Assembly (NCBI RefSeq): GCF_006345805.1
Contig: NW_021832548.1
Span: 9,055-73,054, forward strand
Source: Octopus sinensis
Taxonomy: Eukaryota
Direction: 5' to 3'
DNA length: 64,000 bases
Positions within the stretch are counted from its first letter, which is position 1. Each line of letters starts with the position of its first letter. Positions 19,044 through 61,122 of this stretch are shown here, in pieces. The translations under genes were made by a program, and so were the position numbers. The notes under the pieces are model-generated. The model saw nothing but the letters and a program-made list of their open reading frames with translations, did no database searches and was not told where the DNA came from.

Positions 19044-19080
<37 letters not shown>

Positions 19081-19498
19081 ATAAGGGTGAAAAATTGAAT
19101 ATTAATTTGATTAATATGAATTGAAAAGCAGTGGTGTAGCATATAAGAGCATAGCGGATCTTCCTCTAGCAAAATAACGACCAGTATTAATGACTCATCC
19201 CTGTTATATAAATACTTTCATTTTAATTGTTGCACACTTGCAAAGAGAAAGGAGAAAGTGTAGTGGTAATGGAAGGAGTGAAGCACTTGAAATGAGAGAG
19301 GCAAATCGTAAAATATTGAGTTGTCTCGAATTTTTGCTAAATTGGGGGTCAAATTGAAAAAACTTTATATGCCATGACCCAATGGAATCTACTTAGAAAA
19401 ATCATAGGTAAATTCCAATTGAAGAAATTCTATATTGTACAATTGTATAAAAAACGAACGATTTGGGAGGCAGAGGAAATCTGCCTTTTATCATAAGA

Positions 19499-25168: not shown

Positions 25169-26218
25169 AAGAAGAAAAAATGGAGTTAACGCAGGTGTAA
25201 AAATCTCTTGCAAATTATATCTTCTCATAATAACAAACTGTTAAATATTAATACATTTACTAATACTAACATTAATTTAGCTAATACCATCCAACCCTCT
25301 AGAAATATTAATAACAAGGTTATTGTATCTGAAGTCAATTCCAATAGAATTAAGTTTATGTCAAGTAACTCTAAGATTAAAAATTCTATATACCAGTGTA
25401 TAATCAGTACTCGTAATAAAGTACTATTTTACATTGGAAGCACATCGTTAGAGTTATCTAAAAGAATTTCTATCCATTACTCAACATTTAGGGATAGAAA
25501 TAAACGGAATAGTACCGGTCTCAGCAAACTGATTTGGGACTTAAAAGACCACAATGAACAATTTCATTTAGAATGGTTGATCCTCTCAATTTCGATACCA
25601 TATCACAAAGGCAAGAAATTCTGTCTTCTCTGCAATTCTGAGCTATTTTTCATTATTTTTTCTAAAAATACTCTAGTAAACACGGTTATAGAGCGAGCAT
25701 ACAGATATAGGCATTGGCAAAAACATACATTTAGTGCATATAAGTAGTCTCTATCATTATATATAATTTAAACTTTAATTTCCTTTATATTTAACATTCA
25801 CTATTAATATCCCTACTCTTTCTGTTAGCTACTTATTACGTTATATCATATAACGTTTTTTAAACAATATTAATAGCGTTCTGTCTATCGCTATACAAAT
25901 CCATCAATATTTGCTAAAATGTCGTATTGACGAGTTTCGTTTTTTTCACTTTCCCGAAGAGAAGATTGCATTGTTTATACCATTTATTCTTTTGAATAGT
26001 ATCAGTGGAATTTTCGAAACATGTGTCGAAAGTAAAAATATTTGTTTGCACCTGCGTTAACTCCATTTTTTATTCATATTATTCAAATATTCAACGTAAA
26101 CACGAAGTTTCTACCTTTATAAACAAGGAGTTACAACACCTTTACTTGTGAGATTTTTGATGCCCTGGTAACTATTTATTTATTTTTCCGTGTTAATTGT
26201 TAACAAGGTAAAAATACA

Positions 26219-26634: not shown

Positions 26635-29017
26635 ATTTTATTTTATTTTATCTAGTTTTAGCTCACGAGCTGTGGCCATGCTGGGGCACCGCAATTTGGT
26701 GTTGCTACATGATTTTACTTCACGAATGCTTTTTAGCTATTGCCATTTGGTGCATGAGAGAGTTCGATGCAGCTGTCCTCATCTGCACCTCCTGCCGTGA
26801 AGTTGGTTCATCTTGGACACCTGGCAGGAAGAGATCCAGTTTTATTTTAAAGACATCTGCATCCACCCCATGCAGGTCTCTCAGGTTCTTCGGGAGGATA
26901 TTGAAGAGCTGTGGGCCTCTGAAGCCCAGGCTATCACAGTATCTTGTCCTACATCTTGATGGTAAATTTGGAGTCCTTGGCACTATGCAGTGGCGCCCAG
27001 TTCTGGTATTTGTGTAACTCCCGATGCCAAAGTTTAGGACAAGTCCTTCTAGGATCTTCCAGATGTATATTATGGCATGTCTTTCTCGCCTACGCTCTAA
27101 GGAATAGAGACTTAATCTCTTGAGTCTTTCCCAGTAGCTTATATGCTGCACAGAGGCTATCTTCTTCGTGTAGCTTCGTTGGATCGCCTCAAGTTCTGTG
27201 ATTAACTTGACACTGGATGGTGACCATAGCTGAGAGCAATAGTCAAAGTGGTTTAGGACAAGTGTCCTCCAGAGAACCATCATGGTTTCCTGGTCTCTTG
27301 TTCTAAAGGTTCTAAGAATTCATCCGGTCAGCCGCCTACATTTCATTGCCAATTTAGCAACATGCACATGAAAGGTTGCATCATCACTCATGTAAATACC
27401 CAGGTCTCGCACTGATTGTGCTTCTGGGATTGCAATCCCTCCAGGTCCAGTGTATTTATTGGGTATTGCATTTAGTTTTGCAAGCTGATAGCATAAAGCT
27501 TGAAACTTTTCAGCATTGAACTGCATGTTATTCTTTTCAGCCCACTTGTATATTTTGTCCAGCTCACATTGCAGGTGCTTAGTGTCTTCAGGGTTCTGTA
27601 TTGCCTGTGAAACTTTTGTATCATCTGCATAACTTGTGATCGTGACTCTCTGCGTGGCTGAGGGCATGTCTGAGAGGGCCATTATGAACAGTAGTGGTCC
27701 CAAAACAGTGCCTTGCGGAACACCGCTCACTATTTGCGTGTTAATGGAAGTGGCCCCATTGGCTACTACCACCTGACTTCTATCTTTCAGAAAGTCATGA
27801 AGCCATTCTCCCAATTTTCCAACTATGCCAAGATCACGCAGTTTGTGACATATCATTCCATGATCGACTTTATCAAAGGCCTTTGCAAAGTCGAGATATA
27901 TCACTTCCACATTTGAGTGGTTGAGCAGTCGTTTCAGCACCCAGTCATAGTGTTGTAGGAGCTGAGTTAAGCAGCTTCTTCTTGGTCGGAAACCATGTTG
28001 GGTGTCAGGCAGCAAGTCATTTTCTTCAAGGAAGGTGATTAGTTTCCTTCTGACTATTCGTTCCATGACCTTGCTGATGTGTGAGGTCAGAGAGATAGGT
28101 CTGTAGTTCTTGGCCTCCGCTCTGCTACCTCCTTTATGAATAGGGCATATTTTACCTTCCTTCAGTTTTCTTTGAAGTTTGCCAGTTGCAAGGAAGCTCT
28201 GAAAGAGGAACTGCAGTGGTCTTGCTAGGACTCTCTTACATACTTTTAGAAGGATTGCTGGGAATCCATCGGGGCCAGTTGCTGAGTTTGCTTTCATTTC
28301 ATCTATAGCCTTTATTACATCGTCTTCCTTTATATTGATGTATTCAATCATCGCTGCCTCTGATTTTATATCTGCAGTGGTGAAGAAGTCAGTTGGATTG
28401 CTGACTTGAAAATGCCCTAGGGGTGGAGTGAAAATACACTTGAATCGCTCATTTAGTATTTCACTTATCCTCAATGGATTTCCTGTGAGTGTGCCATCCT
28501 TTTCAAGGAATTGCCCTATCGTACAGTGCACCGTAGCTGTTTCTTTGGCATACCTGTGGAAAGCTCTGGGGTTAGATATAATGTTGTCTATAGCCCAGGC
28601 TTCTTTGTCTGCTCTTTCTTTTTCATGGGAGAGTTGCAGACATTTTTCAATTTCCAACAGTTTTATTTTCAGGCGGGAATTTTCACTGCTTTCAATTAGT
28701 TTGTTTAGGCGACTTGAAACTTTTGTACGCCGTCTCATTAGAATTTTCCTCTCTCTGGGGATTTTGTTCTTGTGTACAGTGGCCTTTCTCTCTGGGACAC
28801 ATTTGTAGTATATGGCTTGCATTACATACATGAATTGTTGGAGTTTCATGTCGATGTCTGGCGAGGAGAGACATTCAGGCCAGTTTTGGTTGAGGATCGC
28901 TTTCTCAATTTGTTTCCAGTTTGCATTATAGAAGTTCAAGCTGGAAAGATTCTGAGAGTTTCTTGTAGACTGCATGTCCATGCTTTCCTTTGGCCCGTAC
29001 ATGGTCTGCTCTACAAT
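26630..29017 (-). mobile_element. CR1-clade LINE, 5'-truncated, RT nearly intact
   Basis: ORFs 27320-29083 and 26720-27283 are in one frame separated by a single TGA (probably TGG); NYRPISLTS, QHGFRP, YLDFAKAFDKVDH, GVPQGTVLGPLLF, YADD, YCSQLWSP and YSLERRR; (TAAAA)n tail. Confidence 0.95.
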
Positions 29018-29415
29018 ATATATATATATATATATTGTAGCCCACGGTGCCGACTCCTTTAATATGCTTGTATATCCAACCAAATACAGTATAGATCAGC
29101 AGATAAATGACCTCCACGAAGCAACAAGAGTGAGTGGCAGAAATTTCAACGTTATGTCTGCAAACCCGAAGGGTCAGTGGGTAAGGTGATGCTGGTTGAC
29201 GGCTGAGGCTGGAGATAACTCAGTTGCCAGATTCAGCATCATTGACGTATGTTCGCTTACCGAATATATTTATGGTAGGAGGAATTGGGAACTTTCAAAG
29301 GATCCAGTGGAGGGGAACGCCAATCAACTAAGCAGAATTATGAGATATTCGGATGAAGAAACAGTGAGCCTGTTGCTAAGCACAATGTCAGAATTCGAAG
29401 AGATGAACGTACCGT

Positions 29416-29860: not shown

Positions 29861-30906
29861 CATACCGTTTCATTTCCAATCCCTTGTGTAGCAGCAATCC
29901 AGACTGTTAGGGGAGTGGAGTAAATCCTTTTTTTCTCAACTGCCAGGATAACCTTACAATGAAGAAGGAGCTTCGATAAGGTAGAAATCCTGATAAGCCT
30001 ACCACTCCCGACGATCCCCTTTGGCATGAATCAACCGAGTCGGAAGAATGCTTAGGAAGCTGTTCAAGCAGCTAGGTCAGCAAGGTCAGCTAGGTCATCC
30101 AGTGTCCAGTGTAGCGTCATATTGAAAAATCTATTAGAAAAATACCAAACAAATGTAGTAAAAAAAAGAAAATGTCTTGACTGTTCTTCTCTTTTTGTTC
30201 TCTCTCTCTCACCTTCTCTCCTCTTACGCTCATTCTCTCTATATTTGTCCCTTTCACTCCCTCCCTCTCTCTTTTCCATGACGTTCTTCTTAATCTTTTA
30301 CTGTAACTCCTTCTTGCCAATCTTCCTTCTTCTCTCCCTTTCTTACTTTCATATCCTTATAACTTTCCCTCACTTTCCTCTCCCGCGTCCTAAGTCGGCG
30401 TCTTTTTCTTAATCACAATACTTCTTTCACCCAATCTCTCACTACTTCGAAATTCTCTATCTTTCTTTTCATCCTTGTATGTGTATATGCAGAAAAGAGA
30501 AAGGGAGAGAAACAGACAGACAGAGAGAGGGAGAAAGAGAAAGATAGGGAGAGAAAAAGAATGAAACAGGAAGACGGGACTTTCAGTTCACTCACACTTC
30601 AAGTTGGAGTTGCGTTTTTCTCTCTAAGTCTGTTATGTTTGGCCTTTTCGATTACGCTATTTGTAAGAGATATCTTTTCGTAAAATTTCTGCTTTCTGGA
30701 AGCCGACAATCATTTCTCCTCCTGCCTTATACCTGTCGCACAAGATCAATAATGTTGTTAGTTATGATGTTACTGATGTCTTCTTACACCTCGGCCTGTA
30801 AGTTAATATTAAGAAACATAATATTTTTTTCTGTTACAACACTGAATATTCTTCTCTTAGATAACATGCTTTCATCTTCGAAAGACACAGTATACACACA
30901 CGCACG

Positions 30907-36228: not shown

Positions 36229-38750
36229 AAATAATGGATATGTATGTATATATCTACATATAAATAAATAAATGAATAAATAAATAGATAAATACCATAG
36301 AATACAAATTAAGATAAATACAAAGGTAAACCTAATATATAGTACTGCTAATATGTATATATCCACATATACATAAATGAATAGATAGATAGATAAATAA
36401 CATAAAATAAAATGAAAAATATACATTGAAATGAGTACATATATAAACTTAGTATACAGGCTACTATTATGTAAATATTTACCTATAGATAAATGAATAA
36501 ATAAATAGATAAATAACATAAAGTACAAATCAAGATGAGTACAATATAGACTAAATATATAAGACTGCTAATATGTATAAAGCCAAATGTAAGTAAATGA
36601 ATAGATTTATTAATAAATAACATTAGATACAAATTAAGATAAGTACAAAGATACACTAAATATACAATATATAAGGCTGCCAAATAAATACCTGCAAAAA
36701 CCCATATACTCATCCAAAACACACAATGTACATTCAATATAGACTCTCATTTATTACATATTAGTATTACAGTATCTAAAACCAGGTTCCCGAACTATGA
36801 TACTCATACACACTCAACAATTTTGGAAATCCCCATGAATATCATATTTCTGTGTATATACCAAAATATATATATTCATGCCACAGTGTATTTCCCTTAT
36901 AAACCAGGACAAAAAAAAACAAGAAACAAAAAACAATCAATACAGAACATATATATTTATATATATGTGTAGCTACAAAATTATAAATTTATAAGTTGCC
37001 TGTTTCAAATTGTAAAGACTACTAGTATAATCAGATATAGAGGAAAGTTAAAATATTACTAGTAGAAAAGCTAAGTTCTATTTAAATCTAGAGAAAGTGT
37101 ACGGTAGTTTATGAATGCAAAAAAAATTTTGCTCATTAATATTATTAATAATAGGCCTACCAGCTTTGATAATGAAAAAAATTTCTTTAATACATAGAGA
37201 GCATTTTTTATTTTTACTATTATATACAGGTGCAGAAGTTAGTATTTTCCAATTTAATTTAAAATCTAAGTTCTTACTTTTGAGTTCCCAAATATACGTA
37301 CTTAACCCCGTAGAGTACATCCTATTTTTATTTCTAAAAGTATATCTATGATAATTAAGTCTCTGTTTCATGCTATTCATAGTTGCTCCGATGTATACCC
37401 TACTGCTAAATTGTGTATCCACAGTGCATTGATAAACTACCTCTTTCTTGAGGCATTGATTACCAAACACACATTGATTTCTGTTTCTGAAATTACAGTT
37501 ATCAACAGGTTGGGGTAATCTAACATTGGCCAAAATTTCTGTAACACTATTCCCATTAATAGTGTTACAATTATTTTACTATCCAATCCCAAATTCAACG
37601 AATGATGGGATTTATCATTATTGGCGATATTCCTATCAATAGTAATAGTATTATTGTTAGTGTTATCATCTAATACATTAATATTTTTCCTTACAGGTAC
37701 GGTACCATCATAATTTGCAAGAGGGTTGTTCGCGTTAGCTCCAAAAGATATATTGTTCCTACGATTATAGAGAGGCAAATTACTATTATCTAAATTCAAC
37801 TTTCTATCATTATAGAAGTAATCCAGCTTCCTGTTATTAAATGAGATGATGGTGGCTAAATTATGTGTAATGCTATATCTTATTCTAACAGTTCCATTGT
37901 TAATTAATTGACCAAATTCATTCCTACCCTTAACAAAGTGCCTAAATATTACATTGTGCAAAGCTCTAACTATGTCTGTTTTTATCTGCAATGCATATGG
38001 GATTATCAGCCATAGTGTATCCTTATCAGTATTAGGGTTGCCTATCAAATTGTTATTTTTAGTAAAAACCTTGTTCCTCCTCCATCCCATATGTTTACTA
38101 TCCTTAACATTATCATTGTTATACCTATCATTATCAATATTACCATAATTATTGCGTAAATAAACTTTATTATTATCATACCTACCATTAGTTTTAATAT
38201 GCATATTATTAATATTACTACCATCACTTATGTGCGCTAATTTATTTAAACTAACGTCAACAGCTCCAAGATTACCAACACCTCTATAATTATCATAATC
38301 GTTTTTATATATCCTATTTTTCCTTGTCTTACAGTTATTATTGTTTGTCCTAAATCTATTGGCGTTGTTCTTAATGGTTCCACCTATATTTGAAGGATTA
38401 TCCTTGGGTATATACCATATTTTACTTTTGTAGCCTGCTTTCAGCAAGGCTGTATTATATCTATCACAATGCTTATTAAAAATGTCCCCGTTTGAGGATA
38501 GATAAGAGATTCTCTGATTAATGCTACGCACTAGTGATCTTTTAATTTGAGGGGGGTGATTGCTAGAACGGTTTATATATACTAAGTTAGAATTGGGTTT
38601 AATATAAGGTTCATGTATCCCATTAGTAAGGTTCCAATTGACATCCAAATAATTGGCAGAATAGTTTTCATTTTCAATAATTGTGGATAGGCCAAAACTT
38701 TTAAAATTTTATGTAGTCTTTTTTTCAGTATATCCAGTCTCGATGGTTGA

Positions 38751-42430: not shown

Positions 42431-42765
42431 TTATTGAGATTGCAGATGTGTTACCTTCAAGCAATATTGATTTTGCAAACAGAACATTCTTAACTATAAA
42501 ATGTCGGTATGATGTAAAAAATTTTATTCAGTTTTTTCTCGTGCGAAATCACAGTGAAGTTATTGTTCAAATCGATTATCAAAAAAAGACAGGAATTTTT
42601 TTGAGGTAGTAACCAGGAAAAAGGGTTTTGACTGTACTCCACCTACATCCTCTCTAAGTAAGATAGGTGTGATTACCTGCACGAAACGTTATCCCTCTTG
42701 TGAGGATGCGACATACTACACATGTTCAACAAATGAAGAATCTTCAAAATCTAGACTTGTAAGAG
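42431..42765 (+). CDS. Ig V-set-like domain exon (Ig1), with a 1-nt frameshift in a T7 run
   Basis: Acceptor T-tract-CTATACAG and donor AG|GTAAGT; ORFs 42409-42609 and 42669-42914 join into ..LTIKC..IQFFLVRN..EDATYYTC..RLVR (DxxxYxC motif); adding 1 nt gives a 336-nt phase 1-1 exon; sequons NRT and NHS. Confidence 0.72.
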
Positions 42766-42864
42766 GTAAGTTTACTCGTTCTATTTTTACTTCCGTTTCT
42801 TTTTTTGCACGTATTCAACTCCATTGTCTTTATTTTTATTTCTATTGCGTGTTTCTATTGCACT

Positions 42865-43240
42865 ATCGAACACACAGTTTCATCCAATCAGGTCAATTGC
42901 CCAGGCCAGCCTGACTACCTCTCTCCATCGCTCCCGATCTTCCATTAGTGTTTTTAGGCCTTCAACTTGGCATCCAACATCTTCTGCAAGCTGTTGTATA
43001 TATGTCTTCCGTGGTCTTCCAGTCGCTGTGGTACCGTGATTTGGTGCCCACAACAACTCGTTACTCACAAGTTCTTCTTTACTTCTCCAGCAATGGTCAG
43101 CAAAACCCAACGTACGCTCTTAGATGATTGATGAGAAAGTTGATACATTCCCATATAACCTTTGTTTTGTTGGGTGCTCCCTCCATTAAATGTAGGGCAC
43201 TGCACGTAACATTCTGGTGTAGGTACCGTCCAGCATGCAC
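42865..43240 (-). mobile_element. RTE-type LINE 3' fragment
   Basis: LDGTYTRMLR..GFADHCWRSKEELVS..LLWAP..GRPRKTYIQQL..MEDRERWR. Confidence 0.85.
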
Positions 43241-43254
43241 TTAAGTCCCTCTCT

Positions 43255-44057
43255 TTCTTTTCTCTCTTTTACTTATTTCAGTCATTTGACAGCGGCCATG
43301 CTGGAGCACCGCCTTTAGTCGAGCAAATCGACCCCGGAACGTATTCTTTGTAAGCCCAGTACTTATTCTATCGGTCACTTTTGCCGAACCGCTAAGTGCA
43401 TGTCTGTATATGCATGCATGAATGTATGTAAATATGTTTGCGTATGTGAATATATATGTATCTATATTGTGTCCACATATTCATACATGCGCACGCACAC
43501 ACATACATACACGCACACAGACAATATATATAAATGCACACAAATACATGCTTATGTGTAAGTAAATATACACGTGTATGAATGTGTCATTCATCTGTTG
43601 TGGAGTTATTGCTAGTGACTTGGCCCCACACAGCCTTAGCACTGCTTACACAGTTAACCACTTCTAAGCAACAGTTCCCAAAGTCCAGGATTAACAATAA
43701 TTGGAGTGTTGTCAAATGTTTTAGTTTTGTATGAAGATTGTAGTTTACATTAGTGAAACTACTCTTTTATTGTGAGGCCCTTTGTTCGAAGATAAGCATA
43801 TTTCGATTCACTTAACTCTTTTTACTCTTTTACTTGTTTCAGTCATTTGACTGCGGCCATGCTGGAGCACCGCATTTCGTCGAGCAAATCGACCCCGGGA
43901 CTTATTCTTTTTAAGCCAAGTACATATTCTATCGGTATCTTTTGCAAGACCGCTAAGTGACGGGGACGTAAATAAAACAGCATCGGTTGTCAAGCAATGC
44001 TAGGGGGACAAATACCACACACACACACACACACACTCACACACACACACACACACA

Positions 44058-44130
<73 letters not shown>

Positions 44131-44295
44131 GATATACGACAGGCATCTTTAAGTTTCCGTCTACCAAATCCACTCACAAGGCATTGGTCGGCCCTTGGAT
44201 AGAGCAGAAGACACTTGCCCAAGATGCCACGCAGTGGGACCGAACCCGAACCATGGTGTTGGTTAGCAAGCTACTTACTACACAGCCACTCCTTC
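43255..44295 (-). mobile_element. CR1-tailed composite SINEs: partial copy 43255-43397 and full copy 43815-44295
   Basis: Same family as 14991-15385. Confidence 0.8.
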
Positions 44296-44336
44296 ACCTA
44301 TTCGTTTTTTTTTGTTTTTTTTTCTTTTCTTTTCAG

Positions 44337-44641
44337 TGAATCTTACATGAAGAAACTTGAATTTCTTAACCCGCCCGCTGAAGTAAACATGTTAGCGATC
44401 TTCAGATGTTCAGCATACATCGGTGCACCTTTTGGCGCTACTGACTTTTTATGGATTCATGAGACAAAACACCACAAATTGATAAATGTGAATAAAGTGC
44501 ATGTTCGACCTTATGGAAAGTGTTTATCTCCAGCAGTGTCACTTAATAAAATCGTTATAAGAGAGGGGGAAATTGGTAACTCAAGCATCTCATGTTCTGT
44601 ATACAATGTATCACGCACTCTACAGCTCACCAAAATAACAG
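44337..44641 (+). CDS. Ig (C2/I-set-like) domain exon (Ig2)
   Basis: Strong polypyrimidine acceptor, donor CAG|GTAAAC; open frame ESYMKKLEF..AIFRCSAYIGAPFGATDFLWIHE..GKCLSPAVS..SSISCSVYNVSRTLQLTKIT; Cys-Trp-Cys spacing typical of Ig folds; sequons NSS and NVS. Confidence 0.8.
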
Positions 44642-45249
44642 GTAAACAAATTTTCTTTGTGTTATCTTCCTTAACGCGCTTTATATATTCTTGTTCATTA
44701 ATATCTCCTGAAACAATATTTCTGGTTAAGTTACACCTTCCAGTAAATTTGTACATCCACTCACGGTTATATTGACAATTATGTTTATCCTTGACAGGTA
44801 TATCATTACGATTAACCAAATTTATATATTTGCTTTTTTAAGATTCTGGAGACATTTAGTTGATATAAGAAGCTGCATCCTTTAAATGCACTCTATATGA
44901 CATGGTTTGCATAAAGTCCTCCTTATGGCGGAAATTGTAGTGAAAAGGTCCGTACAGTATGGAAAAAGCGGACTTTCTCTTTATATATACATACACATGC
45001 ACGAACGCACGTACACACGTACCCACGCAGGGACGCACGCACACGCACACACACATGTATACACACATGCACACACTATACACACAATAGTAGAGAAATG
45101 GTGCACCCCGTCCCACGTGGCAAAGTGGTATGACTCAGCCACTATAAAGTCAGCAATCATTTGTTGTTTGGTCAGTCAGTAGTAGCAGAGTTGTTATTTC
45201 ATTTGCAGGCTAGTTAACATCTTGAATTTTTCTGTGATTTGAATTGTTT

Positions 45250-46400
45250 TTCACTGTGTTTGACTGTTTTGTGTCCGACAGCACTTCGTTTTGCTGCCTC
45301 AGGCGGCTTTGTTGACGCTTTCCTCCTTGTTTGAAAGGGGAGGCACGGTAATGGAGCGAGAACTGAAAAGGTTAGCTCTTCAGACTTGTCGTCCGAGGGG
45401 GAACTTGTTAAAAGTTTGAAAAGTTTGACGAGGCAATGGAGGCCAAGAACTCCAGGCGGTGAAAGATAAAAGTGAGGACGTATGCTTAGAAGAATTGAAT
45501 CAATTCAAGGAAATCTTTGAAATTGAGGGGAACGATGTAAAGGTGTCCCTTTCCAGTGAGACAACGGAACGAGTTAAAAGAAGAACCGTACTGTGCAGAA
45601 CTTACAGTTTGTAATTGCAGCGAACAGAGGTCGCAACCACAACACAGGTTGAAAAGGCATAGAGGAATTGAAGGAAGTGAATATGGAAGGAAGTGAATAT
45701 GGAAGGAAGTGAATATGGAAGGAAGTGAATTACCTTGCCAAAAGCAGAAGATAGACACGGAGAGGTGCTTTTTGCGTCGAAGTCTTGGGCCAGGTAGCAT
45801 TGCGTGACTCCCTTCAAAACGGGTGAAGTGGTCTTTCTAACCATTTACCTGGGAAGGCGTGCTTCTGGGGTAAGGGTAGAAGAGATATCTCCTTAGGTGG
45901 GTGTAGCCTGGCTGGTGGCCGCCATCCCGTTGGGAATGGCAGATAAGGTTGTGAGCTTCCAGGCCAAAAGTATACCACAAAGAAATTGGCACTAGAAATG
46001 ATAATCCAGGCCGCCGTGGGAGATTCAGAGAAGATGGTAGAAACCATCACATTTGGAGAGGATATAAAGCTGAGAGTCTTAGTGGAGAGCAGGACTCACT
46101 GTTGCTTTAAATGCGGTCAAAAGGGCACATAAAACAGGATACACTCTACCTGCCGCAAAGGAACCAACGAAAGAAAGCGCACCTCCACCGCTTGCGATGT
46201 CATGTGTGAGCAAAAAAGAACCGAAGAAGGAGGAAGATAATCAGGTGGCAGAGGAGAAACATGGATGGAATACGGCACCAAAGAAACGGAAGAGAGGGAA
46301 AAGAAGAAATCAAGGTGAAAATGTGAATTCCTACCCTACTCCCACCCTGCCCAACGCTGTCCCACCATTCCCCTGCAGTCACCAACAGCAAGTCAAAGAA
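45250..46400 (+). mobile_element. Tx1/L1-type LINE 5' region, ORF1 remnant with a zinc knuckle
   Basis: RRTVLCRTY.. and CFKCGQKGHIK (CCHC-like) in broken frames. Confidence 0.6.
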
Positions 46401-46699
46401 CAAGAACGACTATTTCTTTATTGCCCACAGGGGTTAAACATACAGGGGACGATATAAATGAGGGAGGAGTGGATAAAACGAATGATTTTACAAAAGATGA
46501 ATAGTTAAAAATTTACGTTAAGAATTTTTATAAATAGGATGATACCAAACAATAACCATACAATGAAGTGGAGGACGAGTTTCGCTTCGACCCCGCAAAC
46601 CCCGTGCCACCATTGTAACCCTTTTGTATAACCTTATTGATATACTATGCGGATTCTTCATTCTCAACAAAGTCGCTACAGCTTTCATCGTTTTCCGTA

Positions 46700-48225
46700 T
46701 AAATCAGGTGACAGGCATTTTATCTCCACCCTTATTTTTCCCTTAAGATGGTAGATGAGGAATTAACCAGTCCAAGGCTGGAGATGAAGTTGCCTCTCAC
46801 GATTCTTTTCACGTGGGTCTTCCATACTACTTCTTTCGGTATAGCGACCACAATGAGAAAACGAGCCATGCCTTCTTTGTTAAAAGAGGAAGCAGGAACA
46901 ATCTATACAATCGACGCGAAAGACAGCTGTACTCCTCCCAGCCGCGTCAGCGGGTGTTCAAGGTAAACCCACATTTCGGAAATTTTGGGTCATTGTACAA
47001 TCGCGTGCAGAACAGTTTCCCTGTCCTGCTCGCATCTTGGGCGCGCGAATTGGTAAGGCTCCTCAGTAACACTGCCAGGCGGAGAATCTTTGGAAGTTAT
47101 CCAAGGGTCCTGGCCCAAAGTCCTTCGGAACAGACAGGCTAGTTGACCATCATCGAAGCCTAGAATCTTCCCCCACATCGTCGTCACACTGAACCTCAAC
47201 CAACCCTCTATAAAAATACGAGGTGGAACCCCCTCCGCTGGCGTTGTCCATGTGACAGAGAAGCTTGAGTGCCTCACAACACTTCGCTTGCCAAGCACTC
47301 AACTATCGTCTACACTTGACCCAAGGTCCTAGTTCACCCAAACTAGTAAGCTTAGTAAATAACACACCGACCGAACGGAGACCACACCTGTTCACTATCC
47401 AGGTAGAGACACAGATAACTCAGCATCAGCGCACGTCTGCGAATCAACAGCCAAGACATCCCTTGCGCACCATTTAGCGGGTGCTGGCAGCAGACAGAGC
47501 GCTTTACAAGAGGACTTCTACTCCACAAAAAACGGAAGAGCAGCCCCTCTAAATTGATCAGCCACGAACGGGGGCAAGGCACGACGGTTAGGCGGTAGGT
47601 AATCACAGAAGCGATAAACACAACTGAGACCTCTGCCCTTCCTTTCAGGGAGAGCCGCTACTCAGACCTCGCTCCAATACTTTATCTGGAGATCTGGACA
47701 AAACTAAACCCCTAACATTTTAACCAGCCCCTCCTTCCAACGCCCTACAATGTTGTTGGGAGGTATCGTCTTGCCTTGCCAGGTGCCGAGTTGCAAGCCG
47801 ATTGACTTATTCCAGTTAACTTTTGCTCCTGCCTCATAGCCTTTAATAGCGTTGCCTACCCTCTGTAGGTGTACCATTTCGGACACTATGGTGGTGATGT
47901 CATTCGCATACGCCGAAACATTCCCACTGCAACCTAGATCTCGTGGGACGCAGTTTAATCTCTCCAACTTCCGCAGCAAGAACTCTAGAGCCAATACATA
48001 CAGAAGTGGGGAGAGAGGACACCTTTGACGAACAGAGTGCTTGATGTTGAACGGCTTCAAGAAGAACCCGTTCGCCCGAACGATGGAGTCAATGTTACTG
48101 TATAAAGCAATGATCCACCCTCTAAAGACGGGGCCGACCCCAAATGCTGTGAGGACCAACACCGGATACCGATGGTCAACCTTGTCAAAAGCTTTCGACT
48201 GGTTGAAATGGACCAGCACCCCACC
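46700..48225 (-). mobile_element. Tx1/L1-type LINE ORF2 remnant (RT and C-terminal Zn-binding region)
   Basis: QSKAFDKVDH, SVRQRCPLSPLLY, SAYANDIT, GAKVNWNKS and RCEQDRETVLHAIVQ. Confidence 0.85.
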
Positions 48226-48614
48226 CTTGCTAGGAAACTCGTTAACACGTGTTTTTACGCCAAACGGAATGTGCCGTTTATGGCGTTAGACCACGTGAAT
48301 AAAGTGCTGGAAAGATTATGTCTTGATAAAATTGAAAAAGTCGACCATATTAAGGCAAATTGCCCCCTTCTCGATAACCAAACACAAATGAGGGTGAGAC
48401 AGGAGGAAAGCAGTAGCAACGAGAAGCTGAAGGAAGATACAGAGGAGGAAAATACAGATGAAGTCCAAGAAACACTACGGGAAAAGTCTCCAAGAACTCC
48501 CCACCCTCTAAGAACGCTGAAAAAAGAAGACAAAGTAACTGAGTGACACACAAACGCCCACACAGCGACTAACACACGAAAATATATACCAGACAGTCCA
48601 AATATATACCAATA

Positions 48615-48880
48615 TATACCAGACTTGCGCGAGCCAACTTTTGATACCGAATGTTCAGGTTGCGCGAGTTGTATTCTCGACTTGCGCTTGTTGAGAAAAT
48701 GTTTATTATCCATGGTTGCATTGTATTGTCTGTTATCTTGTTATCTATTCATCATTTCAAATATACATAAAGTAAAAATAATTGTGTTTGAGTAATTGAT
48801 AACAGTATCTGGTACTCGACTATCGCGAATTTCGAATTGCGCGTCCCCCAATTACTCGCGCAAGTCGAGGAATCCCTGTA
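48615..48880. mobile_element. Tigger/pogo-like MITE
   Basis: Inverted GACTTGCGCGAG / CTCGCGCAAGTC; right end GAGGAATCCCTG-TA. Confidence 0.5.
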
Positions 48881-49674
48881 TACACACCACGTACATACAG
48901 TCCAGTAACACCAATAAATTATTCACAAGCACTCACAAACACTTCACGTAGTGACGGTACAGATTCACTAAGTGATTACGCACGGGCAGGCATACAAGCA
49001 GACACAAGAAACACAAAACAATGATAAAAACAGAGCATTTATAACACACTACTGGATGAATGCAGCCATAGAGGAAAAAATAGGGAAGATGACGGCAGTA
49101 ATTAGAGATATAGAAGAAGAAAACATGAGAGACCCAGGTATGGGATGAATTTTAATTGACAGGAAAAACTATAAAAAATTAAAAGCAAACTGTGGGGACG
49201 AAGTAAACCCATTAGGGGTAGAAATAAGACACGATCCTCTGCCTCCTGTGTTGGATTTCGAAAAACTGAAACCGCTTTCCATTTGCTAAGATAATTATTC
49301 GGATAAACGTTGGATTAAAAATAGTGTAATATATAGCTAAAATGGTACTACACGGAAGTGGGTTGGAGAGTAGCCATTAAATCTTCATTTTTATAGAATT
49401 TCATTTCATTCATCCGTTTATGTTGTTTGTCCCACTTGTGCTGTCTAGTCTGTCCTTGTTCGTCCCCTCTCTGTATGCCCTTGTAGGCAATAGAGAAACA
49501 AGGTCAGTCAGTAGTAGAGAAACATTTGGGGAGTTAAGTTGTATCATTTGCTGGCGTTATATTGTTGTTTAATTGTTGTAGTGTTCCTTGAACACTTAAG
49601 TTTGTGCTGTCTTGCGGCATTTTATATGTGATTTCCCTCCTCATAGAAGAAGGTAGACTGAATAAAAAGAAAAT

Positions 49675-50395
49675 ATGTCAGAAGAGGAAGATATCAGCTA
49701 CTCAGAGCTGTCCTCGTCGGAACAGTCGGAGCAATCGTCGTCGTCAGAGATTTCGTGGAGTACAATAGAGAAACTGAACGAAGAACGGATAACAGAGAAG
49801 AAAAACTTCGCAGAAATCGCAAAGTGTAAGGAATATCAAATCGGATGGGGAAAATGGAGAAATTACATGACAATGATGGGTCACGAAGGATTTAATGTGG
49901 AATTGAACCGCCTCAGAAGAAATGGTTAAAAATAGGAAGGAATGTACAATTATATACAAGACGCATTCCGTAGATGCTGGGAAGATAGACATAATGACTA
50001 CTTACAGAATAGAGAAGGCACTAAGGCCAATCTGGCAAGAGATAACGTATCTTACCTGGGGCAAGTATGGAAATGTAGAGGTGAGATTTAAAGAGGCAGA
50101 AAAGGCAAGGGAGATCGCGGCAACCATTATAAAGAGTGATGAAGTGATACTATTATATATGTACCATAGAAGGCGTGCTTTAAAAGTTAGCGTAGAGGGA
50201 ATCCCACCAGAAGTTGACGTGGTCCGGATAGCAGCCCCTGTCCTACATGGAAATGAGAAAGAGATAGCGGTTCTCCAGGCCACAACGACGGAAAGTAGGC
50301 ATTGCGAAGGCCAAACCTTAAACACGGTCATTCAAGCGCCAAAGAAAACTATTGAGAAAATGCCAGAAACGATAACGATAGATGATGTAATAATG
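49675..50395 (+). mobile_element. Tx1/L1-type LINE ORF1 N-terminal remnant
   Basis: ORF 49922-50446 (IEKALRPIWQEITYL..VEVRFKE..VSVEGIPPEV) resembles the ORF1 remnant at 45.5 kb. Confidence 0.5.
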
Positions 50396-50399
50396 GCCC

Positions 50400-50980
50400 G
50401 ATTTCAATCAAATTTTCAACATAGTAAAGTGGAAGCGGATTTGTAATTTAAGCGTGGAAATGGGTTCAAAGTTTGAAAATTAAGGCAATATTTCTGAAGT
50501 TGAAAAAAAATTTCTCATTTTTACGTATTTTTGCTCTTTACTTTTTATTGTTTACAGTTTAGAGCTTTCATTTGCATGGCCAATCGTCGAAAACTTCACA
50601 AAATAAGTACTAAATTTAACAAAGAAATCCATTTTTTCCTTATTTTTAATCACTCAAATAGTGACACGTACAAAAGGCATGTGTGCTTTCCGTTTTCACT
50701 GCCTGATATTTATGATTGATCTTTCAAAATATTTCCTTTCTCAACTTACTCAAGATCTTTTGTTTTTTATAAATGGGAGAGAGATAGATAAAGAAAGATA
50801 GAGAGTGAGAGAAAGCGAGGAAGAGTCCGAGAGAAAGGAAGAGTAAGAGAGTGGGAAAGTGAGAGAGAAAAGAGAGAGAGAAACAAAGAGGGAGAATGTG
50901 GTGATAAGAACAGAAAGGAGGCAACAGAAAGTAACACCACACCCTCACCCGCACGTATATAGCGGGTCACCTTAAGCTAG
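50400..50980 (+). mobile_element. Non-autonomous Helitron-like element (3' end clear, 5' end approximate)
   Basis: Hairpin ACCCGC..GCGGGT (50947-50967) followed by CTAG at 50977-50980 and T. Confidence 0.55.
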
Positions 50981-51726
50981 TAACATATATTTTTGCGATT
51001 TATTTACTTTGTTTCTTTGTTCTATGTCCCCACAAAGAGACATAGAACAAACGAAACAAATTAAAGACATCTTCGTTGGAGCAGAATACAGCTGAGTTTA
51101 GACAGCAAGAGAAAAGAGAACTACATGTCTGCATCCTGAAGGAATTTCTATGCGTTAAATAGCAGCTAAATCTCCCTGATGCCTATTCTATCGTACTAGT
51201 AAAAGAAAGTTTCATTCGACTATGAAGGCTTAGCTATAAAAGTAAAAATTCAAAAACACTAACATAATCTCTCTAATTATATCTTTTCATTTAAAAAGTA
51301 TGAATAACTCTCGTTAATATAATTCAAACCATGTCTAAAGTAAAAGACAGGGTGTTTACGGAGGGAAAATCTTTGATCATAGGTCAAAGTTATCAGGAAT
51401 GATCTTAAGATCAGCAACGTAATTCGACTGGTTCCAGCAATTTGACATAAGAAGAATACTTCACGAGAATGCTTCAGTTTGTCTGTCTGGCATACAATAG
51501 GTACTAGTTCATATTTCAGAGATGAGGAGCTTGCAGTAGAAAAATATAGAGCGTGGCAAGTCAACATAGAAATAAACAAGAACACATACTATAAACCAAA
51601 AATTTCAATACCGGTATAAAAGATTTATATTAAACAAAAGGAGAAAGATTGAATGAATTTCAGTTCAGGATCAAAATTTGATCATACTTTTCGATTGTAG
51701 ATCTGGTTAAATATATATATATATAT

Positions 51727-51935
51727 ATATAGTAATCCAACATAAAAACACAAAGAGAAAACACAACAACGCGAGGACGTGGAACAACTATAGTATTATT
51801 GGACGCTCAGGAAGGAAGGGAAGAAGGAGGGTTTAACGTTTCGGGCGGAGCTCTTCCTCTGAAATATAGGAGAAGGAAAGATCCAGGGAAGGGAGGACGG
51901 AGGAAAAAAATCGCCAACGGTACACACGCGGTCAC
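51727..51935 (-). mobile_element. PLE pLTR-like repeat (family of 16857-17050)
   Basis: Reverse-complement match; hammerhead core degenerate. Confidence 0.65.
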
Positions 51936-52066
51936 ATTTTGAATGATAAACATTTTGATTTCATTTCCAATTTGGAAAACAAAACTGCATTGAAAACTAA
52001 GATAAAAACATAAATATTATGTTTCTATATATTATTTTGTTTATAATTTTTAATTTTTATTTCTAG

Positions 52067-52099
52067 GTACTGAGCAGAAAGCAATCAGAGACAATGCAG
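52067..52099 (+). CDS. 33-nt phase 1-1 mini-exon of the Ig gene
   Basis: TTTTTATTTCTAG|GTACTGAGCAGAAAGCAATCAGAGACAATGCAG|GTATCT; reads (G)TEQKAIRDNA and is in frame with both neighbouring exons. Confidence 0.65.
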
Positions 52100-53320
52100 G
52101 TATCTTTTATCTTCTAACTTTTGCTTCTTTCAGTTACTGGATGGTGGCCATGCTGGGCTATTTTCTAATAGTCTTTGTCGTACTTATTCCCGAACTGATA
52201 CGTTGTGGGCACGTAAACAAATCAACACTGGTTTTCCAGTGATGGTGGGGAACAAACACTAATATACACATATATACATACATACATACACACGCTACAC
52301 ACACTCACACACACATACACACCGACAGCGCGCGCACACAAATATATACACGACATTCTTGGGTCAAGCATAGACCTATGCAGGGTATCTGACACCTAGT
52401 GTGACATCAGGCGCTCACACCTCTGTCAGCAGGGTATTGGTCTTAGTGGACGTTGTACCGAGACCATCTACACACAATTGGTGGAGAGTAAAAGTGACAA
52501 CATCCTCTAGGAATCTCTGAGTGTCAATGAAGGCCAACTGCCTAGTCGTTTTCGAAGAAGATTTGCGCCGGGTTCCATTGATAATTTACAAAAATTCCTT
52601 GCCTGGCAGTGCTACAGAATAACATTGCCGATTCGTAATAAAATGAACCGGCATGATATTCCCCTCAGCTGCGCTTGCCCTTGATGCACATTGCATGTGA
52701 AAGATGATGCGATTAATGAGAAAGAGACCAAACCTTCATTGACGTTTCAAGTTAAAAGAAAAGTGAGCGTGGAGTGCAAGGTCCTTCCTCCCAGTAAAAC
52801 TGTTACACCGTGGATGAATATAGCAAGAATGGCTCGAGTGAATTGTCGTAACCTAAGCGTGCCCATGTAGTTACAGAAGCATGGAGGAGAGAGAAACACA
52901 ACAGTATTCCTGGTAACAGGGTGACTCAGGATTACTTGGTACTGTGAGGTTACTTGGTTACTGTGAGGTTACTTGGGTAGCGTTTCCCTTTTAATTGGGA
53001 ATTTTGTTGTTTTGATTTTCTTCTGATTATTTATTGTTTACATGTGTTTATGTAAATCTCCATTATCCCTGATTACTGTTTCTGAGGCTGCGAGCTGGTA
53101 GATTCATGAGCACGCCGTAACAAATGCTTGACGGCATTTTGTCCGGCTTTCTGCGTTAAAATGCCACCGAAGTTGACTTTACTTTTCATTCTTTCAGAGT
53201 CAATGAAATAAGCACCAATTGAATACTGGAGTTGATGTAATCGATGTCCACCTTCACCAAAGTTTTTGGTCTTGTACCAAAATTAAAATGAAACGGGCTT
53301 TTTTTTTCTTTCTATTACAG

Positions 53321-53400
53321 ATAAATTATATGATGCAAATATTATTACTAAGATTTTGAAATTTGCAGCAACACTGCTTGTTATTGGCCATTTTCATTAA
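53321..53400 (+). CDS. Terminal coding exon of the Ig gene, hydrophobic GPI-signal-like tail
   Basis: T-tract acceptor CTATTACAG; (D)KLYDANIITKILKFAATLLVIGHFH*, TAA at 53398-53400; donor GTTAGT at 53439. Confidence 0.7.
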
Positions 53401-53496
53401 GGATTTCGGAAAACAAGCCCCAGCAGAATCAAAAAGTGGTTAGTATTGTATTTTTCATTTTCGTTCCTTTGATTTTGTTATTCTTCTATATAATAT

Positions 53497-53719
53497 ATTT
53501 CTTTACTACCCACAAGGGGCTAAACACAGAGGGGACAAAAAAGGACAGATTAAGTCGATTACATCGACCCCGGTGCGTAACTGGTACTTAATTTATCGAC
53601 GCCGAAAAGATGAAAGGCAAAGTCGATCTCGGCGGAATTTGAACTCAGAACGTAACGGCAGACGAAATACGGCTACGCATTTCGCCCCGCATGCTAACGT
53701 TTCTGCCAGCTCGCCGCCG
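53497..53719 (-). mobile_element. Full-length OK-like SINE with 16-bp TSD
   Basis: TSD TTCTTCTATATAATAT at 53481-53496 and 53720-53735; absent from paralogue D1. Confidence 0.92.
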
Positions 53720-54449
53720 TTCTTCTATATAATATTATTGATTAAGTTTGCGATTATGTCGCAGTGGAAATGGTATACCCCTCCCACGGGACAAATGGTA
53801 TGATTCAGCCACTATAAAGTGCGACGACGTCAACCAGTACGGGTAGTCGTCTATCAGCCGTTGTAGAATCGTTGCACGAGTTCTCTGTTGGAGTTAAGTG
53901 TCAGTTAAGGGTTATAGTCGAGTTCGACTCAACAGTGATGGTAGGCGGTTCAAAGAGGCTGTTTTGCAGAGCTATCAGCAATAGCACGATAGACGAAGCG
54001 ATGTATTACTACTCGGTATAGAAGAGATAAACTGTATCCGATACCAGAAAAATGGCCACTATAGTAGATACAAAAGCTACAGTCACAAGAGGCACCACAC
54101 ATTATAGATATGGAAAACACCACATCATAACAGCTTACTGCATTGGTTTTATTCTAAACTCATCGTTATGGTCATTCTTCTTTAATATTTATATAAACAT
54201 TCATCGAGCAAAAGCATTCGATTACTGAACATCCCATGTTTTCACGGGCGTAGATAATCTTGTTTACTTGTTTCAGTCATTGGACTGCGACCACGCTTGG
54301 CTACCAGCTTAAACTGTCGAACAAAGAGACGTCACTACCTATTTTTAAGTTTGGTACTTATTCGATTATCACTTTTACCAAACCTCTAAATTATGGATCC
54401 GTATTTAAGCAACACCAGTCGTGAAGCGCTGGCTGAAGTTAAATACATA

Positions 54450-54795
54450 CGTACGTACATACATACATACATACATACGTACATACATACATACATACAT
54501 ACATACATTCTCTCTCACTTTCACTCACACAATTACATACATACATACATACACATATACATACATACATACATACATACATACATACATACATACATAC
54601 ATACATTCATATATACATACATTCATACATACATACATACATACATACATACATGCATGCATACATACATACATACATACATACATACATACATACATAC
54701 ATACATACATGCATACATAGGTACATACATACGTGCATGCATGCATACATACATACATACATACATAACATACATACATACATACATACATACAC
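54450..54795. repeat. (CATA)n microsatellite
   Basis: Direct observation. Confidence 0.97.
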
Positions 54796-54837
54796 GTATA
54801 ATTTCTTTCTAAGTTGGCAATGCTTTCTTTTTTACAG

Positions 54838-54895
54838 GTTATTTCGAAACTTCCAACCGAAAATTAACTCACGTTTTCTCCGGAAATAAATATTT
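54838..54895 (+). other. Putative last (3'UTR) exon with poly(A) signal
   Basis: Acceptor TTTCTTTTTTACAG; AATAAA at 54885-54890, conserved in the paralogue. Confidence 0.5.
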
Positions 54896-60685: not shown

Positions 60686-61122
60686 GTTTAACCTGCCCTC
60701 TCGAAGCAGAAAAGAGAAAGGGAGAGAAACAGACAGACAGAGAGAGGGAGAAAGAGAAAGATAGAGAGAGAAAAAGAAAGAAACAGAAAGATGGGACTTT
60801 CAGTTCACTCACACTTCAAGTTGGACATGCTTTTTTCTCTCTATTTCAGTTATGTTTGGCCATTTCGACTACGCTATTTGTAAGAGATACCTTTTCGTAA
60901 AATTTCTGCTTTCTGGAAGCCGACAATCATTTCTCCTCCTGCCTTATACCTGTCGCACAAGATCAATAATGTTTTTAGTTATGATGTTACTGATGTCTTC
61001 TTACACCCTCGGCCTTGTAAGTTAATTCAGAAACAATATTTTTCTTCTGTTACAACATTGAATATTCTTCTCTTAGTTAACATGCTTTCATCTTTGAAAG
61101 ACACAGTATACACACACGCACG

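What the first reader, a model, noticed from the sequence alone, without database searches (positions are those of the whole stretch)
42431..54895. Two-Ig-domain, probably GPI-anchored cell-surface gene, only partly visible in the ORF track
Seen in sequence: four exons with canonical GT-AG sites. Ig1 has LTIKC and EDATYYTC (DxxxYxC). Ig2 has FRC..FLW..ISC. A 33-nt linker exon and a terminal exon follow. Ig2, the linker and the terminal exon splice in frame to ...TKITGTEQKAIRDNADKLYDANIITKILKFAATLLVIGHFH*. Established knowledge: a hydrophobic C-terminus with no cytoplasmic tail, 20-30 residues after a small-residue site, is the pattern of GPI-anchored IgSF proteins such as the Dpr/DIP/lachesin type. 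Inference: this is a lineage-specific recognition or adhesion receptor that I cannot assign to a named family.
Basis: partly seen in the sequence, partly recalled or inferred. Interest (0 to 1): 0.82.

Follow-up and report, generated by a model that had tools for sequence, protein, structure and literature searches.

The report
Broken copy of octopus-only Ig gene
The four exons are real and belong to an uncharacterised two-Ig-domain surface-protein gene family found only in octopuses and fast-evolving in tandem arrays, but the copy in this window carries two frame-breaking indels and cannot make the full protein as assembled.

Summary
Three things were missed.

1. A signal-peptide exon lies 11.6 kb upstream, at 30752-30797.
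2. LTIKC and EDATYYTC are in different frames. A T7 run at 42596-42602 is +2 nt relative to five related copies, and a stop follows at 42607.
3. The Ig2 exon lacks one base at its second codon, so Ig1 does not splice to Ig2 in frame.

As assembled, the spliced CDS stops after 74 codons. This copy is either a young pseudogene or carries homopolymer errors from a Nanopore assembly.

Pfam does not recognise the family (0 of 20 members). AlphaFold2 plus Foldseek gives a V-like plus C-like Ig pair, with antibody light chains, butyrophilins and CD4 D1D2 as closest folds. A profile search of 1.84 billion proteins finds 44 relatives. Every named one is Octopus or Argonauta, except one weak bivalve hit.

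O. vulgaris carries at least four further tandem units. Ig1 nonsynonymous divergence among units is 2-5 times the adjacent intron divergence. A GPI anchor is plausible but untested. The gene is not a Dpr/DIP/lachesin relative.

The parts
30752..30797 (+). Exon 1: start codon and signal peptide MLLVMMLLMSSYTSA, phase-1 GT donor (CGGCCT|gtaagt).
   Evidence: Homologous to the signal-peptide exon of O. bimaculoides LOC106880713 (L004 10001). Identical to residues 1-15 of O. vulgaris model P0008. Coordinates.
42431..42765 (+). Exon 2: V-like Ig1 domain (LTIKC ... GFDC ... VITC ... SCEDATYYTC), phase 1 at both ends. Broken by a +2 nt T7 run at 42596-42602; first in-frame stop is TAG at 42607-42609.
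   Evidence: All five related copies are 2 nt shorter at the run and read straight through.
44337..44641 (+). Exon 3: C-like Ig2 domain (FRC ... FLW ... GKC ... ISC). A 1-nt deletion in its second codon (TGAATC versus TGAGATC/TGAAATC) puts it out of frame with exon 2.
   Evidence: 78 residues are 100% identical to P0008 residues 43-120.
52067..52099 (+). Exon 4: 33-nt linker exon, (G)TEQKAIRDNA, phase 1 at both ends.
   Evidence: 96-99% identical to the linker exons of the O. vulgaris units.
53321..53400 (+). Exon 5, coding part: DKLYDANIITKILKFAATLLVIGHFH plus stop (53398-53400). This is the hydrophobic C-terminal peptide, a candidate GPI-attachment signal or short membrane anchor.
54193..54257 (+). 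Relic of an alternative last exon. It would read (D)KHSSSKSIRLLNIPCFHGRR*, a hydrophilic, anchor-less C-terminus. The acceptor here is AT instead of AG, so it is probably unusable in this copy.
   Evidence: Matches the C-terminus of O. bimaculoides LOC106880715 isoforms (P0010). AG is present in units C and D, the partial unit and O. bimaculoides; AT is present in the window and unit A.
54885..54890 (+). AATAAA, a possible polyadenylation signal. Unverified.
   Evidence: An (ATAC)n microsatellite at 54443-54794 lies between the stop and this signal.

Best explanation
The locus is one unit of a tandem array of octopod-specific genes. Each unit encodes a small extracellular protein with five parts: a signal peptide, a V-like Ig domain, a C-like Ig domain, a short linker and a hydrophobic C-terminal peptide. 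It is the positional orthologue of O. bimaculoides LOC106880713. The window is O. vulgaris-like sequence lying upstream of the four units seen in OX597833.1.

Inferred mechanism for intact family members: the protein is secreted into the ER, N-glycosylated and held on the outer face of the cell by its C-terminal peptide. The likeliest means is exchange of that peptide for a GPI anchor. An alternative last exon yields a soluble form. The V-like domain is the ligand-binding part, because its BC, C'-C'' and FG regions diversify faster than neutral among paralogues. That makes it a recognition receptor, immune-type or cell-cell.

The copy in this window is not intact. A +2 nt T-run in Ig1 and a 1-nt deletion at the start of Ig2 truncate the product after 74 codons, and the alternative last exon has lost its acceptor. 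I read it as a recently inactivated array member (about 55%) rather than an assembly artefact (about 35-40%).

Shown: exon structure, homology, synteny, the frame breaks, the Ig folds of the orthologue, taxonomic restriction, the tandem array and dN above intron divergence. Inferred: membrane anchoring mode, ligand-binding role, pseudogene status.
For: - Homologues: seven Octopus proteins with E from 6e-119 to 1.5e-23.
- Exon-by-exon tblastn matches.
- Synteny with O. bimaculoides CM046620.1 across window 6.8-55 kb.
- Collinearity with O. vulgaris unit A at 93-98% identity.
- At least four full units in O. vulgaris at 44.104, 44.130, 44.157 and 44.199 Mb, plus partial units.
- P0008 (CAI9737731.1) is 100% identical to the window over the signal peptide, the first 23 Ig1 residues and 78 Ig2 residues.
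- Frame breaks.
- AF2 of P0003: pLDDT 78, pTM 0.66, two beta-sandwiches of 9 and 7 strands.
- Foldseek: antibody light chains, BTN2A1/BTN3A1 ectodomains and CD4 D1D2 at E 3e-7 to 1e-5.
- Family profile against PDB sequences: light-chain constant domains and Fc-gamma-RII at E 0.002-0.02.
- Profile search of 1.84e9 proteins: 44 hits. All 25 clusters that carry a name are Octopus or Argonauta, except one bivalve hit at E 2e-6; five looked-up clusters are unnamed Logan contigs.
- Ig1 nonsynonymous divergence 0.08-0.15 versus 0.024-0.048 in adjacent introns (nine of ten pairs; Fisher p from 1e-8 to 6e-5). The closest pair, C-D, gives 0.027 versus 0.010, p=0.03. dN/dS is 2-14.
- Variable residues avoid the B, C, E and F strands.
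- C-terminal features and the family comparison.
- Alternative 3' exon.
Against: - Both frame breaks sit in homopolymers (T5 to T7, A3 to A2).
- The reference O. vulgaris assembly is ONT R9.4.1 polished with Hypo (PMC10700109).
- The public model P0008 reads LTIK-LK-SYMKK. No splice of the window can produce this; it requires TGAAATC. So at least the 1-nt deletion is absent from the annotated sequence.
- All nine family cysteines are retained in the window copy.
- No expression data were available, so neither transcription nor the tissue is known.
- No GPI predictor could be run.
- dN/dS came from pairwise Nei-Gojobori counts on short exons of paralogues that may exchange sequence by gene conversion.
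Confidence: 0.7

Rival explanations
1. The gene is intact and functional in the animal. The two frame breaks, and the two 1-nt insertions in the next unit's signal-peptide exon at 60969-61016, are homopolymer errors or haplotype differences of a Nanopore-based assembly.
For: - All the indels are in homopolymers.
- The assembly chemistry is ONT R9.4.1.
- The annotated protein P0008 implies an extra A at the Ig2 start relative to the window.
- All cysteines and sequons are retained, and there is no premature stop once the two indels are corrected.
Against: - The four other units in the public assembly have no frameshift in 2.5 kb of the same exons, so the local error rate is not generally high.
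- P0008 itself skips the second half of Ig1, as if the annotators' sequence also could not be read through there.
- The window copy has also lost the alternative-exon acceptor.
- It has Leu in place of a Trp kept in the five closest copies (KWIN to KLIN).
Confidence: 0.37
2. One reading: a GPI-anchored neuronal adhesion or recognition molecule of the Dpr/DIP/lachesin (IgLON-like) type.
For: Two Ig-fold domains, a signal peptide, a hydrophobic C-terminus without a cytoplasmic tail, and candidate small omega residues (RDNAD, DAN) 20-29 residues from the end.
Against: - No Pfam I-set, V-set or Ig_3 hit in 20 family members.
- No arthropod or vertebrate IgLON/Dpr/DIP protein among the 44 profile hits in 1.84e9 sequences.
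- Closest folds are V-C pairs of antibody, butyrophilin and CD4 type, not I-set tandems.
- Evolution is fast and array-wise rather than conserved one-to-one orthology.
Confidence: 0.05
3. The C-terminal peptide is not a GPI signal. It is either a short transmembrane or amphipathic anchor retained in the mature protein, or the product is simply secreted.
For: - The tail is weakly hydrophobic, with two lysines inside (IITKILKFAATLLVIGHFH; 19-residue Kyte-Doolittle mean 1.4).
- It is more conserved between species than the Ig domains (86% versus 50-66%), which is unusual for a cleaved signal.
- Paralogue model P0007 continues past it into a basic tail (HEVSRKRK...).
- Deep relatives P0021 and P0037 have true transmembrane segments plus cytoplasmic tails.
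- Many isoforms have no hydrophobic end at all.
Against: - A sister subfamily ends ...SSAPAG-ILYSK-WILVVNLILLLVAVAISR, a textbook GPI-type signal, with a similar [ST]K[W]IL motif.
- The uninterrupted hydrophobic run, 9-12 residues, is too short for a bilayer span.
Confidence: 0.3
4. The exons are chance ORFs or parts of a transposable element.
For: The window is repeat-rich. Reverse transcriptase, PIF1 helicase and mariner ORFs lie in the introns and flanks.
Against: - The exons are found only in the IgSF family at syntenic positions in three species, with conserved splice phases.
- The transposable-element ORFs lie in introns, mostly on the other strand.
Confidence: 0.01

Closest known systems
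O. bimaculoides LOC106880713 (XP model P0003, 'Ig-like domain-containing protein') and its neighbours LOC106880714/LOC106880715
   Same: Same exon set, splice phases, order and chromosomal neighbourhood. Protein identity is 50% in Ig1, 66% in Ig2 and 86% in the tail. All family cysteines are shared.
   Different: The octopus-bimaculoides gene is intact and single. In O. vulgaris the unit is amplified to at least five copies, and the copy in this window is frame-broken.
Butyrophilin/B7-type and antibody light-chain-type V-C ectodomains (BTN2A1, BTN3A1, CD4 D1D2)
   Same: Predicted architecture: an N-terminal 9-strand V-like domain followed by a 7-strand C-like domain. These are the top Foldseek matches (E 3e-7 to 1e-5). 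Variability is concentrated in the BC, C'C'' and FG regions of the V-like domain.
   Different: - Only 11-16% sequence identity, and no detectable sequence homology.
- No B30.2 domain or cytoplasmic domain.
- Extra cysteines: five in Ig1 and three in Ig2.
- Phe instead of Trp in the Ig1 C strand.
- The TM-scores of 0.4-0.5 are for the domain pair only.
GPI-anchored two- or three-Ig adhesion proteins (Dpr, DIP, lachesin/IgLON)
   Same: Small size, a signal peptide, tandem Ig domains and a hydrophobic C-terminus without a cytoplasmic tail.
   Different: No sequence relationship. The domains are not I-set. The family is not conserved across phyla. It evolves by tandem duplication with dN above dS rather than under purifying selection.
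Diversified invertebrate and lower-vertebrate IgSF immune-type receptor arrays (snail FREPs, amphioxus VCBPs, fish NITRs)
   Same: Lineage-restricted, tandemly clustered V-domain genes with rapid nonsynonymous change in the V domain, and both membrane-bound and soluble forms.
   Different: No fibrinogen or chitin-binding domain, and no ITIM/ITAM tail in this subfamily. No expression or immune-challenge data exist. The resemblance is an analogy recalled from general knowledge, not tested here.

Membership tests
Immunoglobulin superfamily (Ig fold) | Two-sheet beta-sandwich domains of about 100 residues | tested here: met
   AF2 of orthologue P0003 gives two sandwiches (residues 19-125 and 128-221) with pLDDT 80-92. 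1327 PDB matches at E<=1e-3, all of the top 50 Ig-domain proteins.
Immunoglobulin superfamily (Ig fold) | Conserved B-strand and F-strand cysteine pair, and a C-strand Trp | tested here: met
   Ig2 has C149, W164 and C211 invariant in 20 members. Ig1 has the B-strand Cys and YxC nearly invariant, but the C-strand position is Phe, not Trp. The window copy retains all of these.
Immunoglobulin superfamily (Ig fold) | Match to curated Ig profile models (Pfam ig, V-set, I-set, C2-set) above threshold | tested here: not met
   Window protein: only PF00047 at E=0.025, 15.3 bits against a cutoff of 21.8. 0 of 20 family members hit any Ig model at E<=0.01. Membership therefore rests on fold, not on sequence profiles.
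GPI-anchored surface protein | N-terminal signal peptide | tested here: met
   MLLVMMLLMSSYTSA|F at 30752-30797, conserved in paralogues and orthologues. No dedicated predictor was run.
GPI-anchored surface protein | C-terminal hydrophobic stretch ending the protein, with no cytoplasmic tail | tested here: met
   The last 19 residues are IITKILKFAATLLVIGHFH, with nothing after them. Hydrophobicity is moderate (12-residue Kyte-Doolittle mean 2.17).
GPI-anchored surface protein | Small omega, omega+1 and omega+2 residues, followed by a 5-10 residue polar spacer | tested here: inconclusive
   Candidates are D-N-A (29 residues from the end) or D-A-N (22 from the end). Neither is compelling by eye.
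GPI-anchored surface protein | Positive call by NetGPI, PredGPI or big-PI, and PI-PLC release | not testable with these tools
   No GPI predictor or wet assay was available.
Dpr / DIP / lachesin (IgLON-like) | Sequence homology to arthropod or vertebrate members, and I-set or V-set Pfam domains | tested here: not met
   No such protein among the 44 profile hits. No Pfam hits.
Octopod LOC106880713-type IgSF family (unnamed) | Signature: signal peptide MLLxMMxLMxxSY, then Ig1 with ...GFxC...CWK...CxDxxxYxC, then KxKS linker, then Ig2 with FRCxA...FxW...C...ITC. Phase-1 exons in tandem clusters on one chromosome. | tested here: met
   Alignments. Window translation (CTK instead of CWK). Cluster membership.
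Unprocessed pseudogene | Frame-disrupting mutations relative to intact orthologues and paralogues, with introns retained | tested here: met
   +2 nt at 42596-42602, -1 nt at about 44340, and an AG-to-AT change at 54191-54192.
Unprocessed pseudogene | The disruptions are real in the organism's DNA, not assembly errors | not testable with these tools
   There was no read access. P0008 implies that the -1 nt is absent from the annotated sequence. The assembly is ONT-based.

The most novel reading that the evidence does not exclude
The window samples an undescribed, octopod-restricted repertoire of V-C Ig receptors that sequence profiles cannot see. The repertoire is amplified in tandem: at least five LOC106880713-type units in O. 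vulgaris against one in O. bimaculoides, with about a dozen consecutive family genes. Members occur as anchored and soluble isoforms through alternative last exons. Their V-like domain is under diversifying selection in CDR-like regions. This would be a cephalopod counterpart of immune-type or allorecognition IgSF arrays such as NITRs, VCBPs, FREPs and butyrophilins, with birth-and-death turnover that leaves broken copies like this one.
Probability: 0.3. Interest if true: 0.75.

Novelty: new member of a known kind. Interest (0 to 1): 0.45.

Why it matters
Cephalopod immunity and cell recognition are poorly understood at the molecular level, and known octopus gene expansions are dominated by protocadherins and zinc fingers. 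A Pfam-invisible Ig family with three properties would be a concrete candidate for a diversified recognition system in a mollusc. Those properties are restriction to octopods, expansion in tandem, and amino-acid change in its V-like domain faster than in its introns.

On the practical side, the public O. vulgaris gene models across this array are chimeric:
- One 726-aa model spans 144 kb and four units.
- One model joins the Ig1 exons of two units.
- One model lacks the signal-peptide exon.

The array needs manual re-annotation before any expression or evolutionary study. For this specific window the significance is lower, because the copy is broken or mis-assembled.

Tried and rejected
- Pfam on the reconstructed protein and on 20 family members gave no Ig model above threshold.
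- phmmer of the reconstructed protein against PDB sequences gave nothing. Only the family profile gave weak light-chain and Fc-receptor hits.
- I considered a short intron (donor at 42506, acceptor near 42605 or 42616) to explain the Ig1 frame change. I rejected it because all homologues read continuously through that stretch.
- I looked for any donor-acceptor pair in the window that reproduces the public model's LTIK-LK-SYMKK junction. None exists.
- I tried to fetch the DNA under P0008 to compare the two indel sites directly.
- Four literature searches by LOC numbers, XP and UniProt accessions, and topic found no paper on the family.
- The noncoding block just upstream of Ig2 (int1b) was dropped as a neutral yardstick, because a SINE and microsatellite make it non-homologous between units.
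- I checked whether O. sinensis locus L003 overlaps the window. It does not; only repeats match.

Full report
**1. What is in the window**

The sequence is AT-rich, repeat-laden octopus DNA. They have polypyrimidine/AG acceptors, and the three internal exons have GT donors.

**2.

LTIKC and EDATYYTC are in different frames of the Ig1 exon. The first frame ends ...QKKTGIFLR followed by TAG at 42607. Aligning the exon with four O. vulgaris paralogues and the O. bimaculoides orthologue shows the cause. A T7 run at 42596-42602 is 2 nt longer than in all five copies. With T5 the exon reads ...KTGIFEVVTRKKGFDC..., which matches neighbouring units (IFEVV in P0008 units 2 and 3).

The second problem is at the Ig1-Ig2 junction. 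The Ig1 donor is phase 1 (AGA G|gt). The Ig2 exon starts cag|TGAATC, where the relatives have TGAGATC or TGAAATC. As assembled, the junction therefore reads V-N-L-T-stop.

The five-exon CDS as it stands ends after 74 codons. Removing two T's and adding one base gives a 263-codon open frame with all family cysteines.

**3. Missing parts**

The orthologue begins with a separate signal-peptide exon (L004 10001). Its counterpart in the window is 30752-30797 (MLLVMMLLMSSYTSA, phase-1 donor), 11.6 kb upstream of Ig1.

Downstream of the stop, 54193-54257 is homologous to an alternative last exon. In O. bimaculoides LOC106880715 isoforms this exon gives a hydrophilic, anchor-less C-terminus. Units C and D, the partial unit and O. 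bimaculoides have an AG acceptor there. The window and unit A have AT.

**4. Relatives and genomic context**

The reconstructed protein hits seven Octopus proteins with E from 6e-119 to 1.5e-23.

The window is syntenic with O. bimaculoides CM046620.1 around LOC106880713, including the upstream neighbour's last exon. It is collinear at 93-98% identity with a unit of O. vulgaris OX597833.1.

That chromosome carries full units at about 44.104, 44.130, 44.157 and 44.199 Mb, plus partial units. A run of annotated family genes, CAI9737727 to CAI9737738, lies there.

The O. vulgaris model P0008 (726 aa; gene span 144 kb) starts with the window's own exons at 100% identity. So the window is the first of the units that this model strings together. 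However, its junction LTIK-LK-SYMKK cannot be produced from the window by any splice and needs TGAAATC. The sequence that was annotated therefore differs from the window at the 1-nt deletion.

The reference assembly is ONT R9.4.1 polished with Hypo (PMC10700109), so homopolymer errors are a live alternative. Against that, four sister units show no frameshift in the same exons. P0008 also avoids the second half of Ig1.

**5. Are these Ig domains?**

Sequence profiles say almost nothing. The window protein gives PF00047 at E=0.025, and 0 of 20 family members hit any Ig model. phmmer against PDB finds nothing.

Structure prediction is clearer. AF2 of the intact orthologue with a six-sequence alignment gives pLDDT 78 and pTM 0.66. 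It shows a 9-strand domain followed by a 7-strand domain, then a low-confidence C-terminal helix.

Foldseek against the PDB returns antibody light chains, BTN2A1/BTN3A1 ectodomains and CD4 D1D2 at E 3e-7 to 1e-5, with TM 0.4-0.5 and 11-16% identity. The family profile weakly hits light-chain constant domains and Fc-gamma-RII by sequence.

The 20-member alignment shows the B/F cysteine pairs, the Ig2 C-strand Trp and additional conserved cysteines. The two-Ig reading is therefore supported at the fold level, as a V-like plus C-like pair.

**6. Distribution**

A profile HMM search of 1.84 billion representatives finds 44 proteins at E<=1e-3. All 25 looked-up clusters that carry a name are O. vulgaris, O. 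sinensis, O. bimaculoides or Argonauta hians, except one bivalve Ig protein at E=2e-6. Five further looked-up clusters are unnamed Logan contigs. No Dpr, DIP, lachesin or IgLON protein appears. No paper mentions these loci.

**7. Evolutionary behaviour**

Among the window copy and units A-D, the Ig1 nonsynonymous proportion is 0.08-0.15 for nine of ten pairs. Synonymous divergence is 0.01-0.05, and the 1.35 kb of introns immediately flanking the exons diverge by 0.024-0.048 (Fisher p from 1e-8 to 6e-5 against introns). The closest pair, C-D, gives 0.027 versus 0.010 (p=0.03). dN/dS is 2-14, and 1.4-1.8 against O. bimaculoides.

Ig2 is near neutral among A-D but elevated in the window copy. Variable Ig1 positions avoid the B, C, E and F strands. 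They cluster in the BC region, the C'-C'' hairpin, the D-E segment and the FG loop.

Relaxed constraint cannot push dN above the neutral rate, so diversifying selection, possibly with gene conversion, is the best reading. It rests on pairwise counts over short exons and needs codeml with recombination control.

**8. Anchoring**

The tail IITKILKFAATLLVIGHFH ends the protein with no cytoplasmic residues. It contains two lysines and is only moderately hydrophobic.

- A sister subfamily ends ...SSAPAGILYSKWILVVNLILLLVAVAISR, a textbook GPI-type signal.
- Deep relatives (P0021, and Argonauta P0037) have true transmembrane segments plus cytoplasmic tails.
- Many isoforms have no hydrophobic end.

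GPI attachment is thus plausible (about 45%) but not shown. A retained short anchor, or secretion, remains possible.

**9. Verdict**

It is not of the Dpr/DIP/lachesin type. The copy in this window is frame-broken or mis-assembled. The interesting object is the family and its array rather than this copy.

Noticed in passing
window 4587-4632 (-), 30752-30797 (+), 60969-61016 (+): The promoter plus signal-peptide-exon block occurs three times in the window. The first copy is inverted, inside an 8.7-kb segment that is the reverse of the flank upstream of O. vulgaris unit A. The third copy has two 1-nt homopolymer insertions that change its splice phase.
   Followed up: partly
window 7823-7902 (+): An intact paralogous terminal exon, (E)KLYNANIMTKIVTFATYMLFISYLR*, with a good acceptor. 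It is the last exon of the upstream family member (LOC106880714-like). Its Ig exons are not in the window.
   Followed up: partly
O. vulgaris OX597833.1 about 43.95-44.24 Mb (L001, L002, L005; proteins P0001, P0002, P0004, P0008): The public gene models across the array are chimeric or truncated. P0008 joins four units over 144 kb. P0001 joins the Ig1 exons of units B and C and skips both Ig2 exons. P0002 lacks the signal-peptide exon and uses a cryptic donor inside Ig1. P0004 has a spurious N-terminus.
   Followed up: partly
window 27320-29083 (-) and 47704-48219 (-): Reverse-transcriptase ORFs (Pfam RVT_1, E 2e-31 and 7e-11). The first is a 587-aa open frame in the first intron. The second is a fragment in the 7.4-kb intron between Ig2 and the linker exon.
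   Followed up: partly
window 17312-20096 (-), 11958-12527 (+), 25208-25747 (+), 37078-37533 (-): Other mobile-element remnants. There are two PIF1-like helicase ORFs (Helitron-type; E 4e-43), a mariner-type Transposase_1 ORF (E 5e-21), and two ORFs that resemble each other by eye, of which only 25208-25747 gave a weak, sub-threshold GIY-YIG match (37078-37533 hit no Pfam family).
   Followed up: partly
window 43260-43400, 43810-43960, 54250-54330 and elsewhere: Repeated copies of a short interspersed element (motif ...CTTGTTTCAGTCATTTGACTGCGGCCATGCTGGAGCACCGC...) flank the Ig exons. One sits with a (CA)n(TA)n tract directly upstream of the Ig2 acceptor.
   Followed up: no
window 54443-54794: An (ATAC)n microsatellite of about 87 copies lies between the stop codon and the putative poly(A) signal. 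It generates the long 'HTYIHTYI' pseudo-ORFs in the ORF list.
   Followed up: no
family alignment A5: The family has an odd number of conserved cysteines per domain: five in Ig1 and three in Ig2. This suggests an extra intradomain bridge plus a possible interdomain or intermolecular disulfide.
   Followed up: no
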